From: Octopus sinensis
Taxonomy: Eukaryota
Direction: 5' to 3'
Assembly: GCF_006345805.1 (NCBI RefSeq)
Contig: NW_021825371.1
Location: 1-15,699, forward strand
DNA: 15,699 bases
Every line of letters starts with the position of its first letter. Position 1 is the first letter of the stretch. Both the position numbers and the translations under genes were made by a program. Positions 1,313-14,532 of this stretch are shown here, piece by piece. The notes below the pieces were generated by a model, which was given only the letters and a program-made list of their open reading frames with translations, made no database searches and had not been told where the DNA came from.

Positions 1313-2065
1313 TTCCACGTAACTAAACACTTTTAAACTTCGTATATTGGTAGAATGTGTTTATAAAACATCTTTTTCTCTTGGCTTTATTGAGAAAATT
1401 CTATAGTTTGTTAAATATTTGTAGTTTTTTTCTTCAATTTCTCAAATTTCAACCAATCACTGACGTCTATTGAGGTAAATAACACTGTGCCGTATGAATA
1501 TGTCCCTCGTTTAAGAAATAGATTGGGTTTATTTACATTTGTGAAGAAAAAAAGATACCCTTCTTCCACGTAACTAAACACTTTTAAACTTCGTATACTG
1601 GTGAATGTGTTTATAACATCTTTTTCTCTTGCTTTATTGAGAAAATTATATAGTTTGTAAGATATTTGTAGTTTTTTTTTCTTCATTTCTCAAATTTCAA
1701 CCAATCACTGGCGTCTATTGAGGTAAATAACACTGTGCCGTATGAATATGTCCCTCGTTTAAGAAACAGATTGGGTTTATTTACATTTGTGAAGAAAAAA
1801 AGATACCCTTCTTCCACGTAACTAAACACTTTTAAACTTCGTATACTGGTAGAATGTGTTTATAAAACATCTTTTTCTCTTGGCTTTATTGAGAAAATTA
1901 TATAGTTTGTAAGATATTTGTAGTTTTTTTCTTCAATTTCTCAAATTTCAACCAATCACTGACGTCTATTGAGGTAAATAACACTCTGTGCCGTATGAAT
2001 ATGTCCCTCGTTTAAGAAACAGATTGGGTTTATTTACATTTGTGAAGAAAAAAAAGATACCCTTC
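1313..2065 (+). repeat. Three tandem copies of a ~250-bp unit inside the TIR element
   Basis: TTCCACGTAACTAAACAC starts at 1313, 1564 and 1812; the units are nearly identical and differ mostly by small indels. Confidence 0.97.
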
Positions 2066-2073
2066 TCCCCACT

Positions 2074-3770: not shown

Positions 3771-3959
3771 CTTTCGGCTACAAGCACATGGCTTGAAATT
3801 AGGGGGTAAGGGCCTGGTCGATTGCGTCAATCCTAATGCTCAGCTAAGTACTTATTTTATCGACCCCGAAGGGATGAAAGGCAAAGATCGTAAAGGCAGA
3901 CGAAATGCTGCTAAGCATTCTTATGCGGCGTACTTACGACTTTGCCAGCTCACCGCCTT
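3771..3959 (-). mobile_element. SINE family B with an internal deletion
   Basis: Reverse complement starts AAGGCGGTGAGCTGGCAAAGTCG (A-box-like) and lacks the B-box segment; the core CCTTTCATCCCTTCGGGGTCGATAAAATAAGTAC is present. Confidence 0.88.
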
Positions 3960-3960
3960 A

Positions 3961-3998
3961 ATAGTAAAATAATAATAATAATAATAATAATAATAATT
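3961..3998. repeat. (TAA)n microsatellite
   Basis: Read directly. Confidence 0.95.
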
Positions 3999-4000
3999 AA

Positions 4001-4185
4001 TTCGTTTATTGGCCACAAGGGCTGACAAAAATTAATTAAAACATAAAGGGACAAAACACAGGATGGAAGTTAGAAAGGGTTTTGTCCGTTTGCAAAAAAA
4101 CGTGAAAAAATTCCAGAGATAACAACGAAAATATAACAATTGAAATTCCCAATAGGGGGAGGCGCTTCGAAAGGTTACTCGTGGA
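4001..4185 (-). mobile_element. Probable retroelement 3' UTR fragment with a tail resembling one family B tail type
   Basis: TTTATTGGCCACAAGGG...AAACATAAAGGGACAAA resembles the family B tails at 12501-12545; bounded by (TAA)n on both sides. Confidence 0.5.
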
Positions 4186-4248
4186 TAATAATAATAATAA
4201 TAATATAATAATATAATAATAATAATAATAATAACAATAATAATAATG
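4186..4248. repeat. (TAA)n microsatellite, imperfect
   Basis: Read directly. Confidence 0.93.
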
Positions 4249-4267
4249 ATATATTAATATTTATAAT

Positions 4268-4436
4268 GTCAAATTTTTGCGACAAGGGCAGTGCGTAACT
4301 GGTATTTCTTTAAGCGACCCTGAAACGATGAAAGGGCAAATTCGACCTAGGCGGAATTTGAACTTACAACGTAAATACGGACGATATGCCGCAAAGCATT
4401 TCGCCCAGTGCGCTAACGACTCTGCCAGCTCGCCAC
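4268..4436 (-). mobile_element. SINE family B with a 38-bp 3' deletion
   Basis: Reverse complement: GTGGCGAGCTGGCAGAGTCGTTAGC...AGTTCAAATTCCGCC...ACCAGTTACGCACTG|CCCTTGTCGCAAAAATTTGA. Confidence 0.9.

Positions 4437-4437
<1 letters not shown>

Positions 4438-4484
<47 letters not shown>
4438..4484. repeat. (TAA)n microsatellite between two divergent SINEs
   Basis: Read directly. Confidence 0.97.
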
Positions 4485-4485
<1 letters not shown>

Positions 4486-4487
<2 letters not shown>

Positions 4488-4709
4488 GCGGTGAGCTGGC
4501 AGAAATGTTAGCACACCGGACGAAATGCTTAGATGCATTTCGTCCGTATATACGTTCTCAATTCAAATTCCGCCAATGTAAGGTCGACGACTTTGCCTTT
4601 CATTCTTCCGGGGTCAATAAATTGAGTACCAGTTGCGTACTGGGGTCGATCTAATCGACTGGGCCCCTCCCCAAAACTTTCGGGCATTGTGCTTAGAGTA
4701 GAAAAGAAT
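4486..4709 (+). mobile_element. SINE family B, full length
   Basis: A-box-like TGGCAGAAATG, B-box-like TTCAAATTCC, core GCCTTTCATTCTTCCGGGGTCAATAAA, tail TTGTGCTTAGAGTAGAAAAGAAT. Confidence 0.93.
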
Positions 4710-4993
4710 AACAATGATGCTGATGATGACGATGGTTATTATTATCAATAACGAAACAAGTGTGTAGTACTTGCATGAAAATAAAATATATAAAATAGAT
4801 TTTTTAAAATAAATACAAAAAAAAAATATAAACCAATATACAAACAAAAAAGTTGTAGAGACAGAAAAAAAAAATAAAAGAAAATCCGGAAACAAACAAA
4901 AACAATGAAAAATGGTGAACACGTGTGGAATTGAAAGATTCAGAAATGTCTGCAGGGCACTAACGAAACAGACGCGAACAAGAAACAAGAACA

Positions 4994-5047
4994 GGGTGGG
5001 CGATGGGTGGCACACGGGGTGGGCGACGGGTGGCACACGGGGTTGGC
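4994..5047 (+). repeat. 23-bp G-rich tandem repeat, 2.3 copies
   Basis: GGGTGGGCGAYGGGTGGCACACG at 4994-5016 and 5017-5039, then the partial GGGTTGGC. Confidence 0.9.
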
Positions 5048-5094: not shown

Positions 5095-5500
5095 TGTGTA
5101 TGAGTGTGTGTGTCCTCGTATGCATATATAAATGTATACATGAATGTATGTGTGCATGTATCTATGTATGTATGCATGCATGTACGTATGTATGTATGCA
5201 TGTATGTATACATATATATATATGTATGCATGTATGTATGCATATATACATGTACACATGAATGTATGTGTACATGTATTTATGTATGTATGCATGCATG
5301 TATATACATATATGAATGTATGTATGTATGCATGTATGTATATATACATATATATATATGTATGCATGTATGTATGCATATATACATGTACACATGAATG
5401 TATGTGTGCATGTGTTGATGTATGTGTATACGAATGTGTGTGTATGCATGCATCTATGTATGCGTCAAGGTACTTCATGTATTCATGTATGCATGCGTGT
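5095..5500. repeat. Compound (TATG)/(TA)/(CA) microsatellite with ~136-bp higher-order repetition
   Basis: CATATATACATGTACACATGAATGTATGTG recurs at 5241 and 5377. Confidence 0.9.
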
Positions 5501-5562
5501 ATGTATGTCGTTATACACATACAAAGGTTCATTCTAAGCTTTACGGTGTTGTGTGTGTGTAT

Positions 5563-5705
5563 TCTTTTATACATTTACTTGTTTGTCATCGACCCCAGGA
5601 CCCCTAAAGAAATATCAGTTACGCACTGGGGTCGATGTAATCAATTTAATCCCCTACCCCAAGCTGCCCTTGTCGCAAAAATTTGAAATTATAAATATTA
5701 ATATA

Positions 5706-5739
<34 letters not shown>

Positions 5740-6077
5740 CTACGAGTAACCCAGGACTTATTCTTTGTAAGCCTAGTACTTATTCTATCGCTCTCTTTTT
5801 GCCGAACCGCTAAGAGGCCTTAAACACACCGGCATCGGTTGTCAAGCGAATGTTGGGGGGGAGGACAAACACAGGCACGCAAACATACACACACACATAT
5901 ATACATATATACGACGGGCTTCTCTCAGTTTCCGTCTACCAAATCCACTCACAAGGCTTTGGTCGGCCAGAGGATATAGTAGAAGACACCGATTCAAGAT
6001 GCCACGCAGTGAGACTGAACCCGGAACCATGTGGTTGGGAAGCTAACGTCTTACCCCACACAGCCATTCCTGCGCTT
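5563..6077 (-). mobile_element. SINE family A with a 3' internal deletion and a 148-bp insertion
   Basis: Head at 6077 (reverse complement AGCGCAGGAATGGCTG) and body colinear down to 5750. The tail remnant TTTACTTGTTTGTCATCGACCCCAGGAC lies at 5574-5601. Confidence 0.9.
5602..5749 (+). other. Inserted inverted copy of local sequence 4173-4312, flanked by the 8-bp direct repeat CCCAGGAC
   Basis: Manual alignment shows 3 substitutions outside the microsatellite; direct repeats at 5594-5601 and 5750-5757. Confidence 0.85.
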
Positions 6078-6727: not shown

Positions 6728-6824
6728 TTATCTATAAAACGTGTTCTGAATGTGCGCTGCTGGAATAAGGATGTGTCTTATACGGCCGTGCATAATTTAT
6801 GACAATAAACGTAGCAAAATGAAT

Positions 6825-6965
6825 GAAGGCGCATGGCCTACTTGCAAGGGTGTTGCAATTACGATCACTAGATCGGGTGTTCGATTCCCAGGCCAAGTTG
6901 CACATTGTGTTCTTGAGCAAAGCACTTCATTTCGAGTTGTTCCAGTCCAATCGGCTGTAAATGGC
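6825..6965 (+). mobile_element. Third tRNA-derived SINE family, old copy, with a Meta/MESC-like central domain; 3' limit uncertain
   Basis: GGCGCATGGCCTA (A-box-like) and GTTCGATTCCC (B-box), then TGTGTTCTTGAGCAAAGCACTTCATTTC...CCAGTCCA. Confidence 0.65.
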
Positions 6966-7099
6966 AAACCCTACACGAGTGAGACGGTGACTCCTGAGAA
7001 GCCAACGGAACGGTCGACTCGCGAACCACGTTTCGTATTCAGTGATCGAAACGGTGAATAGCACAACTGGTCGGGATTGGTTGCTCTACCATGTCGAAG

Positions 7100-7414
7100 G
7101 ATGATGATGATGATGATGATGATGAGAATGACGAAGACGATGATGGTGATGATAGTTATGAAGACGACATGACGATGATGGTGATGATGATAATCATGAT
7201 AATTCTGATGATGACTATGTCGATACTGGTGATGATAGTGATGATGATGGTGATGATGATGCTGGTGATGATGATGCTGGTGATGATAGTTATGACGATG
7301 ATGGTGATGATAGTTATGATGATGATGATCATGGTGATAGTGATGATGATCATAATTGTGATGATGATGATGATGATGATGACGTTGATGATGGTGATGA
7401 TGCTTATGATGATG
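7100..7414. repeat. Long degenerate (GAT)n trinucleotide microsatellite
   Basis: Read directly; it generates the poly-D/M and poly-I ORFs. Confidence 0.95.
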
Positions 7415-10050: not shown

Positions 10051-10136
10051 TTTTACACTTGAGAATTTTTTTTCAATTTTTAGTCTCTACGAGTGACCAC
10101 TGACAAGAATGTTTGTCTGCATATAATGAGTTTCTG

Positions 10137-12227: not shown

Positions 12228-12303
12228 CTGGGAAAACAATAACCTGTAGGGGCTTCTGGGATGTGAACTACCTGAATACGGCTATCAATAATATATTGAT
12301 ATT

Positions 12304-12500
12304 GGTTTCAAATTTTGGCACAAGGCCAGCAATTTCGGAGGAGTGGGTAAGTCGATTACATAGACCTCAGAACGCAACTGGTACTTACTTTAACGACCCC
12401 GAAAGGATGAAAGGCAAAGTCGATTTCGGCGGAATTTGAACTCAGAGCGTAGGGACGGGCGAAAAACAGCAAAGCATTTCGCCCGGTGTGCTAACGTCTG
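12304..12500 (-). mobile_element. SINE family B, slightly 5'-truncated, tail type 2
   Basis: Core and the tail GGCCTTGTGCCAAAATTTGAAAC on the reverse strand. Confidence 0.9.
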
Positions 12501-12685
12501 TTATTTCTAAATTGTCCACAAGGGGCTAAACATAGAGGGGACAAACAAGGACAGACAAAGGGATTAAGTCGATTACATCGACCCCAGTACGTAATTGGTA
12601 CTTATTTAATCGACCCCGAAATGATGAAAGGCAAAGTCGACCTCGGCGGAATTTGAATTCAGAACGTAGCGGATGACGAAATACC
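12501..12685 (-). mobile_element. SINE family B, 5'-truncated, tail type 1
   Basis: Core plus the tail TTTGTCTGTCCTTGTTTGTCCCCTCTATGTTTAGCCCCTTGTGG on the reverse strand. Confidence 0.92.
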
Positions 12686-12843
12686 TATTTTTTTTCTACC
12701 CACAAGGGGCTAAACACAGAGAGGACAAACAAGGACAGACAAACGGATTAAGTCGATTACATTGACCTCAGTGCGTAACTGGTACTTATTTAATCGACGC
12801 CGAAAGGATGAAAGGCAAAGTCGACGTCGGCGGAATTTGAACT
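12686..12843 (-). mobile_element. SINE family B, 5'-truncated at the B box, tail type 1
   Basis: Same core and tail as 12501-12685; begins at AGTTCAAATTCCGCC on the reverse strand. Confidence 0.92.
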
Positions 12844-13055
12844 GGGGCTAAACATAAAGGGGACAAACAAGGACAGACAAAGGGATTAAGTCGATTACAT
12901 CAAACCCTGTACGTAACTGGAACTTATTTAATCGACCCCGAAAGGATAAAAGGTAAAGTCGACCTCGGCCGAATTTGAATCCAGACGTTAGCGGCAGACG
13001 AAATACCGCTAAGTATTTCGCCCGGCGCGCTAACGATTCTGCCAGCTCGCCGCCT
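12844..13055 (-). mobile_element. SINE family B with an intact head and a clipped type 1 tail
   Basis: Reverse complement starts AGGCGGCGAGCTGGCAGAATCGTTAGC and ends at TTTAGCCCC. Confidence 0.93.
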
Positions 13056-13063
13056 ATATATTG

Positions 13064-13140
13064 ATTTTCTTTTCTACTCTAGGCACAAGGCCCAAAATTT
13101 TGGGGGAAGGGACCAGTGGATTAGATCGAACCCAGTACTT
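13064..13140 (-). mobile_element. SINE family B 3' fragment, tail type 2
   Basis: Reverse complement AAGTACTGGGTTCGATCTAATCC...GGGCCTTGTGCCTAGAGTAGAAAAGAA. Confidence 0.85.
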
Positions 13141-13309: not shown

Positions 13310-13931
13310 TGCACACACACACACACGTACTGAAACATAAATCTACATTATTTATATGCATATGTAAATACATGTCAAAATTAATATATATGTATCCAAA
13401 TATCTACATTTATGTTTTTTAAGATTGCTGCAGATATGTAAACGCATAAAACACTATAAGAATAACCACACACACACATGTACATACGTTCATGCACACA
13501 TACATATACATACACTCGAACAAACACGCATAATATGCATACCCATATATTTACACACATACACACAATATATATATATATACTCATATTTACACATACA
13601 TACACACACATACACACCTATATATATATACACACACACACATATACACACACACACATATACACACACATATATATATATACACACACACACATAAACG
13701 TGCTCTCGTACACACACAACCACACACACACACATACATACACATACACGCATACACACACAAAGACTACACCACACACACATATATACACACACACACA
13801 CACACAGACAGACAAAAACGTGCTCTCGTACACACACAACCACATACACACATGTACACATACATACACATACACGCATACACACACAAACGTACATGCT
13901 GCAAAAACTACACCACACACACACACACACG

Positions 13932-13963
<32 letters not shown>

Positions 13964-14112
13964 TACACACACACAAAAACGTGCTCTCCTACACACACAA
14001 CCACATACACACACATGTACACATACATACACATACACTCACACACACACAAACGTACATGCTGCAAAGACTACATCAAACACACACACACACACACACA
14101 TATACATATATA
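13310..14112. repeat. (CA)/(TA)-rich tract with a higher-order minisatellite
   Basis: AAACGTGCTCTC recurs at 13696, 13816 and 13977; AACGTACATGCTGCAAA occurs twice, about 162 bp apart. Confidence 0.93.
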
Positions 14113-14532
14113 TTTATGAAAAAGAAAATGTCTGCCTTCGCACCGCCGTCTTCTCAGATATTACATATAGGGTGGAGCATAAGGAGCGCCCAAAGACATT
14201 TCTTGAGATTCTCTTTATTTATGTGACACCATTCCTTATTACTTCCTTCCTTTCCTACCACGGCACACACACACACACACACCACACACATACACACAAT
14301 GTATGTATATATCGGTATATGTGTATATATATGTACATATATATATGTGGATATATGCACTCATCAATGCGTGTTACTTGTAAAGATTTGACATGTTTAA
14401 CGCAGTGTTAATACAGTTTTTTTTTAAAGTGCCCCTACGGCAGCAAGTGCAAGATGTGTGAATATACACACATATATATGCACGGACATAATACTATTTA
14501 TATGCATACACACACGCACGCATATATATAAA

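What the first reader, a model, noticed from the sequence alone, without database searches (positions are those of the whole stretch)
5594..5757. Locally templated inverted insertion with an 8-bp target-site duplication
5605-5751 is the reverse complement of 4173-4312, about 1.3 kb away. It spans a SINE tail, the unique linker TTATAAATATTAATATATC, the (ATT)n array and 13 bp of the next element, so the donor is probably this locus and not a family consensus. It interrupts a family A SINE and is flanked by CCCAGGAC repeats, with CC microhomology at one end. The copy retains 38 bp (5629-5666) that the donor lacks, deleted at a CTG microhomology, so it may preserve the ancestral donor state. Possible mechanisms are templated break repair (polymerase theta or synthesis-dependent) or local retrotransposition with 3' transduction.
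Basis: partly seen in the sequence, partly recalled or inferred. Interest (0 to 1): 0.7.

Follow-up and report, generated by a model that had tools for sequence, protein, structure and literature searches.

The report
Inverted SINE fragment copied from next door
A 148-bp piece of a short repeat (SINE), plus 12-14 bases of that repeat's own flank, was copied backwards from 1.3 kb away into another SINE in what is almost certainly octopus DNA; it is a real but ordinary mutational scar, and the copying mechanism is not settled.

Summary
Window 5605-5751 is the reverse complement of 4173-4312, with 106 of 109 aligned bases identical. The copy keeps 38 nt that the donor lacks, and the donor's (ATT)n array is 31 nt longer. 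The 8-bp CCCAGGAC repeat is a true target duplication, because six other family-A SINEs in the window carry it once.

Two details need correcting. The "unique linker" is just the normal 3' end of SINE family B. The 38 nt is ordinary SINE-B body, so the donor lost it later.

What still ties the copy to this locus is the 14-mer ATCYACGAGTAACC after the (ATT)n tail. It is flank DNA and occurs nowhere else in the window. The pair also shares 13 derived bases.

My estimates:
- Copied from the neighbouring locus: about 0.65.
  - By a DNA-level template switch or repair synthesis: 0.40.
  - By reverse transcription of a read-through transcript: 0.25.
- Both are members of a dispersed subfamily that carries the 14-mer: about 0.27.

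The decisive genome-wide search could not be run, because no octopus genome collection can be searched by DNA here. This is a known class of event and of low to moderate interest.

The parts
5594..5601 (+). Left copy of the 8-bp target-site duplication, CCCAGGAC
   Evidence: Read from the sequence. The family-A consensus from six other copies has a single CCCAGGAC.
5602..5604 (+). 3-nt filler, CCC, at the 5' junction. It matches neither the donor (GCT) nor the target.
   Evidence: The donor sense strand reads ...GGGTCGCT|TAAAG and the copy reads ...CAGGACCCC|TAAAG.
5605..5707 (+). 5'-truncated body and 3' end of a family-B SINE, sense on the + strand. It includes the 38 nt (5629-5666) missing from the donor and the so-called linker.
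   Evidence: Alignment with nine other B copies. 13 derived bases are shared only with the donor.
5708..5737 (+). (ATT)10 tail of the inserted SINE fragment
   Evidence: (ATT)n is the normal family-B tail, as in O. vulgaris L040 7481-7686.
5738..5751 (+). ATCTACGAGTAACC, the copy of the donor's private 3' flank. The last CC overlaps the target duplication (microhomology).
   Evidence: The exact pattern is found only here and at 4173-4186 on the minus strand.
5750..5757 (+). Right copy of the 8-bp target-site duplication, CCCAGGAC
4248..4438 (-). Donor: a full-length family-B SINE with a tRNA-like head (TGGCGAGCTGGCAG...) and box-B-like GTTCAAATTCC. It has a secondary 38-nt deletion between 4288 and 4289 at a CTG repeat.
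4187..4247 (-). Donor tail: a long (ATT)n array interrupted by G and TA, 31 nt longer than in the copy
4173..4186 (-). ATCCACGAGTAACC, the DNA flanking the donor's tail. It continues as TTTCGAAGCG..., which was not copied.
   Evidence: The first T4 run on this strand lies at 4131, 42 nt beyond the copied end.
4005..4172 (-). Downstream DNA ("element 2"). Its last ~75 nt resemble the long-tail B variant and end in their own (ATT)10 at 3968-3997. The 5' part has no other copy in the window.
5560..6075 (-). Host: an older tRNA-derived family-A SINE (sense on the minus strand) interrupted by the insertion
   Evidence: 71-85% identical to seven other copies in the window. Also found in Octopus vulgaris L040.
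5586..5593 (+). Junction (5589|5590) of a 43-bp deletion in the host SINE (consensus TTGACTGCGG...GAGCAAAT is missing; AT microhomology). It lies 12 nt left of the insertion point.
   Evidence: Comparison with six family-A copies.

Best explanation
A break or stalled fork inside an old family-A SINE was repaired or restarted using the neighbouring family-B SINE locus, 1.3 kb to the left, as a DNA template.

**Proposed steps.**
1. The growing + strand left its template after ...CCCAGGAC (5601).
2. It acquired three bases of filler (CCC).
3. It copied the + strand of the donor from 4312 down to 4173. That stretch is the 3' half of the SINE, its (ATT)n tail and 12-14 nt of flank, and the result is an inverted copy.
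4. It returned to the original template through a 2-nt CC match, 8 nt behind the point where it left. That return creates the 8-bp duplication.

This is a template switch of the FoSTeS/MMBIR or fold-back-synthesis kind.

**Later changes.** The donor lost 38 nt by a deletion between CTG repeats, the two (ATT)n arrays changed length, and three substitutions accumulated.

**Shown:**
- the insertion and its boundaries
- the target duplication
- the shared flank
- that the 38 nt is ancestral
- the private similarity of the pair

**Inferred:**
- that the neighbour, and not a paralogue, was the template: about 0.65
- that the template was DNA and not RNA: about 0.40 of the total
For: 1. **The copied unit is not a SINE unit.** It ends 12-14 nt beyond the (ATT)n tail in DNA that occurs only at the donor. 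Normal B copies end in (ATT)n followed by unrelated flank, both in the window and in O. vulgaris L040 7349-7700.
2. **The pair is private.** Identity is 106/109, against 57-73% among other B copies. They share 13 derived bases in 66 comparable columns and differ at 2 of those columns.
3. **The geometry fits.** An inverted copy of a nearby template with junctional microhomology is the published signature of MMBIR-type templated insertions (PMC8421209) and of fold-back insertions at breaks (PMC11724301).
4. **Random retroposition rarely lands this close.** Landing within about 1.5 kb of the source in a genome of about 2.7 Gb has a chance of about 1e-6 per event. This is my own estimate. SINE load is taken from PMC13282606.
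5. **The target is atypical for family B.** The other B 5' ends that can be read in the window abut A/T-rich tails or (AAT)n: 3960, 4438, 4486, 12499 and 13055. This insertion sits in GC-rich CCCAGGAC.
6. **The surroundings could stall replication (inference).** They include a head-to-head SINE palindrome with an (AAT)15 centre at 4345-4579, a G-rich 23-bp repeat at 4994-5047 and a 330-bp (ATGT)n array at 5132-5462. A 43-bp microhomology deletion lies 12 nt from the junction.
Against: - The left junction has no microhomology, only 3 nt of filler.
- An 8-bp duplication, a 5'-truncated SINE and microhomology only at the 3' junction are exactly what target-primed reverse transcription leaves.
- Documented MMBIR-type and fold-back insertions are mostly under 100 bp long and copied from within about 100 bp (PMC8421209, PMC11724301). 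Here 148 nt were copied from 1.3 kb away.
- The 3' boundary lies only 12-14 nt past a SINE tail. That would be a coincidence (roughly 1-2%) if the boundaries were arbitrary.
- The genome-wide copy number of the junction is unknown.
Confidence: 0.4

Rival explanations
1. The insertion was made by reverse transcriptase from a read-through transcript of the neighbouring SINE-B. This is local retroposition with a short 3' transduction, or RNA-templated patching of a break. The nicked bottom strand ...CCTGGG-3' paired with CC in the RNA 12 nt past the tail and primed cDNA synthesis. Synthesis stopped early, giving the 5' truncation. The 5' end was then joined with 3 nt of filler, and the staggered second nick gave the 8-bp duplication.
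For: - The 8-bp target duplication is verified against the family-A consensus.
- The SINE is 5'-truncated, with CC microhomology only at the 3' junction and filler at the 5' junction.
- The donor keeps a full head and a box-B-like GTTCAAATTCC. It has no T4 terminator until 4131, so a Pol III transcript would run through the flank.
- SINE insertion is by far the commonest insertion process here, with about 18 SINE fragments in 15.7 kb.
- Class 1 templated sequence insertions in humans show that a LINE enzyme can insert non-element RNA with target duplications (PMC5110952).
Against: - No tail or repeat follows the transduced 12-14 nt. The copy ends inside the read-through region, 42 nt before the first terminator, so internal priming is required.
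- The partner enzyme of a SINE with an (ATT)n tail is expected to start in that tail.
- The target is GC-rich, unlike the other B insertion sites in the window.
- Landing 1.3 kb from the source is about a 1e-6 chance unless nascent RNA is used in cis, which has not been shown for animal germ lines.
Confidence: 0.25
2. The neighbour is not the source. Both copies are ordinary, independent insertions of a young family-B subfamily, or of a composite unit, whose mobile form already ends in (ATT)n-ATCYACGAGTAACC. They lie near each other only because B SINEs are extremely dense.
For: - B fragments are very dense, with 10 in 15.7 kb. Two members of a moderately common subfamily could therefore fall within 1.3 kb by chance.
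- This reading explains the target duplication, the 5' truncation and the junction polarity by canonical retroposition.
- It makes the donor's 38-nt deletion and longer tail simple private changes.
- This hypothesis could not be tested directly.
Against: - Under this reading the full-length copy at 4173-4438 has no target duplication: the upstream flank is ...ATTATTA and the downstream flank is TTTCGAAG.
- No other B copy in the window (8 others) or in 72 kb around the rhodopsin gene of three Octopus species has the subfamily tail words or the 14-mer after a tail.
- Normal B copies end in (ATT)n directly followed by flank.
- A unique 12-14-mer after a microsatellite tail is not how SINE 3' ends of this kind are built (general knowledge of LINE/SINE 3' ends).
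Confidence: 0.27
3. It is an assembly artefact: a chimeric read or a mis-join created the inverted segment.
For: Repeat-dense, microsatellite-rich DNA is hard to assemble. No reads could be inspected.
Against: - The segment has clean boundaries and an exact 8-bp duplication of a site that is single in the family consensus.
- It differs from the donor by three substitutions, a 38-nt indel and a 31-nt microsatellite difference. It is therefore not a duplicated read segment.
Confidence: 0.03

Closest known systems
MMBIR/FoSTeS templated insertions (MMB-TI) and fold-back inverted insertions at breaks
   Same: Both give an inverted copy of a nearby template on the same chromosome, with microhomology at a junction, a small duplication at the return point, and possibly an accompanying nearby deletion (PMC8421209, PMC11724301).
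   Different: This copy is longer (148 nt) and was taken from farther away (1.3 kb) than the typical events, which are 10-100 nt copied from within 100 bp. One junction has filler instead of microhomology.
LINE-mediated SINE retroposition with 3' transduction (target-primed reverse transcription)
   Same: Both show a target-site duplication, 5' truncation, 3'-junction microhomology, and source-specific flank carried along with the element.
   Different: There is no tail after the transduced piece. The 3' end is not at a terminator. The source is 1.3 kb away instead of anywhere in the genome. The target is GC-rich.
Templated sequence insertion polymorphisms (TSIPs) of the human genome
   Same: Both are insertions of a sequence templated from elsewhere in the genome. 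Class 1 TSIPs have target duplications of at least 5 bp, and class 2 TSIPs have microhomology and filler (PMC5110952).
   Different: TSIP templates are distant. Class 1 has a poly(A) tail and a TTTT/A target, both absent here. Class 2 lacks the target duplication that is present here.
Polymerase-theta end joining (TMEJ) templated insertions
   Same: Both involve local templates in either orientation, filler, and microhomology at the resolving junction (PMC4912351, PMC5068794).
   Different: From my own knowledge, TMEJ insertions are usually a few to a few tens of nucleotides copied from next to the break. They are not 148 nt copied from 1.3 kb away, and they do not by themselves give an 8-bp duplication.

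Membership tests
Canonical SINE retroposition (TPRT) | The insertion is flanked by a target-site duplication | tested here: met
   CCCAGGAC lies at 5594-5601 and 5750-5757, and is single in six other family-A copies.
Canonical SINE retroposition (TPRT) | The 3' end of the insert is the element's own tail, here (ATT)n | tested here: not met
   12-14 nt of non-SINE DNA follow the tail. Normal B copies end in (ATT)n.
Canonical SINE retroposition (TPRT) | The source is a dispersed master copy, so many copies share the same ends | not testable with these tools
   No octopus genome collection can be searched by DNA here.
3' transduction | The offspring carries unique sequence that flanks the 3' end of the source copy | tested here: met
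   ATCYACGAGTAACC is found only at the donor flank and in the copy.
3' transduction | The transduced segment ends at a downstream terminator or poly(A) site and is followed by a new tail | tested here: not met
   The first T4 run is 42 nt further on. No tail lies between AACC and the target duplication.
MMBIR/FoSTeS templated insertion | The insert is a copy, often inverted, of a template close by on the same molecule | tested here: met
   The copy is inverted and the template lies 1.3 kb upstream. That distance is greater than the 100 bp or less used to define MMB-TIs (PMC8421209).
MMBIR/FoSTeS templated insertion | Microhomology at both switch junctions | tested here: inconclusive
   There is a 2-nt CC match at the right junction. 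The left junction has 0 nt of microhomology plus 3 nt of filler.
Polymerase-theta (TMEJ) templated insertion | A short insert copied from sequence immediately next to the break | tested here: not met
   148 nt were copied from 1.3 kb away.
TSIP class 1 | Target duplication of at least 5 bp, plus a poly(A) tail with signal, plus a TTTT/A target | tested here: not met
   The duplication is present. There is no poly(A) tail, and the target is GACCCCAGGAC. Criteria are from PMC5110952.
TSIP class 2 | No target duplication; end-joining features only | tested here: not met
   An 8-bp duplication is present.
Octopod tRNA-derived SINE families (A and B of this window) | The same families are present in Octopus genomes | tested here: met
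   Copies 82-90% identical lie around the rhodopsin genes of O. vulgaris, O. sinensis and O. bimaculoides.

The most novel reading that the evidence does not exclude
The insertion is a cis-local, RNA-templated repair event. A read-through Pol III transcript of the SINE, still near its gene, was reverse-transcribed at a break 1.3 kb away. That would be a footprint of nascent-RNA-templated break repair, or of "local hopping" by a retroposon, in an animal germ line.
Probability: 0.2. Interest if true: 0.6.

Novelty: new member of a known kind. Interest (0 to 1): 0.3.

Why it matters
**What it is.** On its own this is one fixed structural mutation in non-coding, repeat-dense DNA.

**Use as a mechanistic footprint.** The donor and the product lie in one window, the target site can be reconstructed from paralogous SINEs, and the donor changed afterwards. 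Both before and after states can therefore be read.

**What a survey could show.** If a genome-wide survey found many such local inverted copies in octopus genomes, it would show that template switching adds to the SINE-rich architecture alongside retroposition. It would also show that template switching creates closely spaced inverted SINE pairs. Such pairs can fold into double-stranded RNA when transcribed. From my own knowledge, that structure is relevant to the heavy A-to-I RNA editing of cephalopods, but I did not test this here.

**Caution for repeat annotation.** A fragment that looks like a 5'-truncated SINE with a target duplication need not have been made by retroposition.

Tried and rejected
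**Searches for the junctions elsewhere**
- I scanned the metagenome collection for the subfamily word CTTGTCGCAAAAATTTGA. It gave 39 loci, all chance matches with about 25% flank identity.
- I scanned the viral and prokaryote genome collections for the flank junction, the tail and the family-B core. There were no hits.
- The ORF 5553-5813 spans the whole insertion. An exact look-up and a homology search with it both returned nothing. ORF 6750-7061 is also not on record.
That hit, P0046, has no contig on record.
- A full-text search for SINE sequence words in papers gave only unrelated primers.
- The 400 kb of O. vulgaris transcripts held as a supplement of PMC9115989 contain none of the junction words. 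They also contain only 1-2 B copies, so the result has no power.

**Checks on features in the window**
- The Rfam and tRNA scans gave only sub-threshold microRNA look-alikes on microsatellites and no tRNA.
- The third, 2-mismatch match of the 14-mer at 10085 shows no further similarity to the pair, so I treat it as chance.

**Ideas rejected**
- *The 12-mer in the copy derives from family A (CGAGCAAATCGACCCC).* Rejected, because it matches the donor flank at 13/14 positions, which is much better.
- *B plus a 50-nt extension seen in L040 and L042 is a composite family.* Rejected, because the two are orthologous, with collinear flanks and a small inversion.
- *Gene conversion between two independent B copies.* Rejected, because conversion cannot add non-homologous flank.

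Full report
**What the window is.** The 15.7-kb window is AT-rich, microsatellite-rich eukaryotic DNA. It has no convincing genes, tRNAs or curated RNA families. It is packed with two tRNA-derived SINE families.

- Family A is about 320-520 bp, with 8 copies in the window.
- Family B is about 250 bp, with 10 fragments.

Both families occur at 82-90% identity around the rhodopsin gene of Octopus vulgaris (L040), O. sinensis (L041) and O. bimaculoides (L042). The window is therefore octopod DNA. The species was not determined. SINEs make up about 11.6% of the O. vulgaris genome (PMC13282606).

**The observation.** Window 5605-5751 aligns to the reverse complement of 4173-4312 in three blocks with 106/109 identities. 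The donor has 31 nt more of an interrupted (ATT)n array. The copy has 38 nt (5629-5666) that the donor lacks. The diagnostic 29-mer and 14-mer occur only at these two sites, where shuffles expect none.

The insertion proper is 5602-5749 (148 bp). It is bracketed by CCCAGGAC at 5594-5601 and 5750-5757. Six other family-A copies in the window read AAATCGACCCCAGGACTTATTC with a single CCCAGGAC. They serve as paralogous empty sites and show that the 8-bp repeat is a true duplication of the target.

**Anatomy of the donor.** Read on the minus strand, 4438-4248 is a full-length family-B SINE. It has the tRNA-like head (TGGCGAGCTGGCAG...) and a box-B-like GTTCAAATTCC. It is followed by its (ATT)n tail (4247-4187) and then by ATCCACGAGTAACC-TTTCGAAGCG....

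Upstream of its head lies (ATT)15, shared head-to-head with another B copy at 4486-4720. The simplest history is that this SINE inserted into an existing (ATT)n tract. Its own target duplication is then hidden in the microsatellite, and ATCCACGAGTAACC is older flanking DNA.

**Anatomy of the copy.** The copy begins in the middle of the SINE body (TAAAGAAATA...). It runs through the SINE 3' end and an (ATT)10 tail, and then carries ATCTACGAGTAACC. The last CC overlaps the target duplication.

- An alignment of ten B copies shows that the 38 nt is ordinary SINE-B body (GGGTCGATGTAATC...CCCC...), present in every other copy. The copy does keep the ancestral state, and the donor lost the 38 nt later between two CTG triplets.
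- The same alignment shows that the "unique linker" is not unique. GCCCTTGTCGCAAAAATTTGAAATTATAAATATTAATATATC aligns with GCCTTGTGCCAAAATTTGAAACCAATATCAATATAT (12295-12330) and with ...GAAAATCAATATATA (about 13055-13070). It is the family's 3' end, so that argument for a local donor fails.

**What still ties the two together.**

- Their identity is 97%, against 57-73% for other B pairs. The tandem duplicates at 12.5-13.0 kb are excepted.
- They share 13 derived bases in 66 comparable columns and differ at only 2 of those columns.
- They share the 12-14 nt after the tail. This is the strongest link.

Normal B copies end in (ATT)n followed by unrelated DNA, both in the window and in O. vulgaris, where L040 7349-7700 has about 65 ATT units and then ACGCTTGATATC. 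Each member of the pair also has private changes. The copy has C>T at 5614. The donor has A>C at 4271, judged against other B copies. They have therefore diverged since the copying.

**Mechanism.** The product is non-canonical for retroposition in three ways.

- It ends inside the donor's flank and not at the tail.
- It carries no new tail.
- The first Pol III terminator (T4) on the donor's sense strand is 42 nt beyond the copied end.

Any RNA model therefore needs internal priming at the CC. The target (GACCCCAGGAC) also differs from the other B insertion sites that can be read in the window, which are A/T-rich tails or (AAT)n. A random retroposition would land within about 1.5 kb of its source about once in a million events (my estimate).

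An inverted copy of a nearby template with junctional microhomology is the published signature of replicative template switching (PMC8421209) and of fold-back synthesis at breaks (PMC11724301). Returning 8 nt behind the departure point would create the duplication without a staggered cut. The interval between donor and target holds structures that plausibly stall forks: a SINE palindrome with an (AAT)15 centre, a G-rich 23-bp repeat and a 330-bp (ATGT)n array. A 43-bp microhomology deletion in the host SINE lies 12 nt from the junction. Whether it belongs to the same event is unknown.

Several points weigh against the DNA model.

- The 8-bp duplication, the 5' truncation, the microhomology confined to the 3' junction and the 3-nt filler at the 5' junction have exactly the polarity that target-primed reverse transcription leaves.
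- The copy is longer and was taken from farther away than typical template-switch insertions.
- A copied segment that ends only 12-14 nt past a SINE tail is a coincidence if its boundaries are arbitrary.

A rough weighing of base rates against these likelihoods leaves the DNA and RNA versions within a factor of about two of each other.

**The untested rival.** Both copies could be independent insertions of a young B subfamily, or of a composite, whose mobile form already ends in (ATT)n plus the 14-mer. B elements are dense enough (10 fragments in 15.7 kb) that two members of a moderately common subfamily could lie 1.3 kb apart.

Against this rival:

- The full-length copy would then have no target duplication.
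- None of the other 8 B fragments in the window shows the subfamily tail or the 14-mer after a tail. The same holds for the B copies in 72 kb from three Octopus species.

That sample is too small to exclude a subfamily below about 10% of B copies. The decisive whole-genome search was not possible. The DNA collections on hand hold no octopus sequence, the protein-based routes failed, and the transcript supplement has almost no B copies.

| Reading | Probability |
|---|---|
| Template was the neighbouring locus, copied at the DNA level | 0.40 |
| Template was the neighbouring locus, copied through RNA | 0.25 |
| Dispersed subfamily or composite element | 0.27 |
| Assembly artefact | 0.03 |

The first two rows sum to 0.65 for the neighbouring locus as template.

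**Dating.** The pair differs by 2.8% (3/109, with a wide error). At the rhodopsin locus, non-coding divergence is 4.1% between O. vulgaris and O. sinensis and 11.5% to O. bimaculoides. The event is therefore recent, and a related species should still show the empty site.

**Significance.** Whichever mechanism applies, this is a new example of a known class of mutation. I rate it of low to moderate interest.

Noticed in passing
window 4345-4579: Two family-B SINEs lie head to head around a perfect (AAT)15 (4440-4484). They form a 117-nt-arm palindrome with 77% complementarity and 1 nt between the arms.
   Followed up: partly
window 3782-4438 and 12295-13138: Family-B elements are stacked in one orientation, each starting in the A/T-rich tail of the one before. 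This suggests that tails are preferred targets. The second array also contains a 138-bp tandem duplication of SINE 3' halves (12706-12979, 88% identical).
   Followed up: partly
window 5586-5593: The host family-A SINE lacks 43 bp of consensus (TTGACTGCGG...GAGCAAAT; AT microhomology), and the deletion ends just 12 nt left of the insertion point. The resulting TCATCG matches TCATCG of the donor SINE in register, 19 nt from the junction. This is probably coincidence, because CGACCCCAGGAC matches family A at 12/12.
   Followed up: partly
window 4994-5047: A G-rich 23-bp unit (GGGTGGGCGACGGGTGGCACACG, 2.3 copies) has runs of GGG that could form a G-quadruplex. It lies between donor and target.
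   Followed up: no
window 5132-5462: An (ATGT)n-type microsatellite has a higher-order period of 136 bp (2.2 copies, 83% identical). It lies directly upstream of the host SINE. It also produces most of the sub-threshold microRNA look-alike hits in Rfam.
   Followed up: no
window 1313-2066: A 248-bp unit is repeated three times in tandem at 95% identity. It has no similarity to the SINEs.
   Followed up: no
window 7100-7414: A long, degenerate (GAT)n array of about 105 units gives an artificial 151-aa Asp/Met/Ile-rich ORF.
   Followed up: no
window 13745-14113: A 163-bp higher-order repeat (2.3 copies, 84% identical) lies inside a large (AC)n/(ATAC)n field at 13547-14113.
   Followed up: no
L042 18948-19204 versus L040 22703-22447 (and L041 23012-22757): A 257-bp segment holding a family-B SINE is inverted in place between O. 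bimaculoides and O. vulgaris/O. sinensis, while the flanks stay collinear. About 3.7 kb of extra DNA lies on one side in the vulgaris lineage. This is another small local inversion involving a B SINE.
   Followed up: partly
window 5758-5800 (family A) and family-B bodies: Families A and B share the short motif GGGGTCGAT(T) and an AATAAGTAC-like word in their sense strands. The two SINE families may share a module.
   Followed up: no
L040 23535-23555 and L041 23845-23865: GATCCAACGAGTAACCGAG resembles the donor flank ATCCACGAGTAACC (one indel) but sits in an unrelated context, with no (ATT)n before it and a different sequence after it. I treat it as chance.
   Followed up: partly
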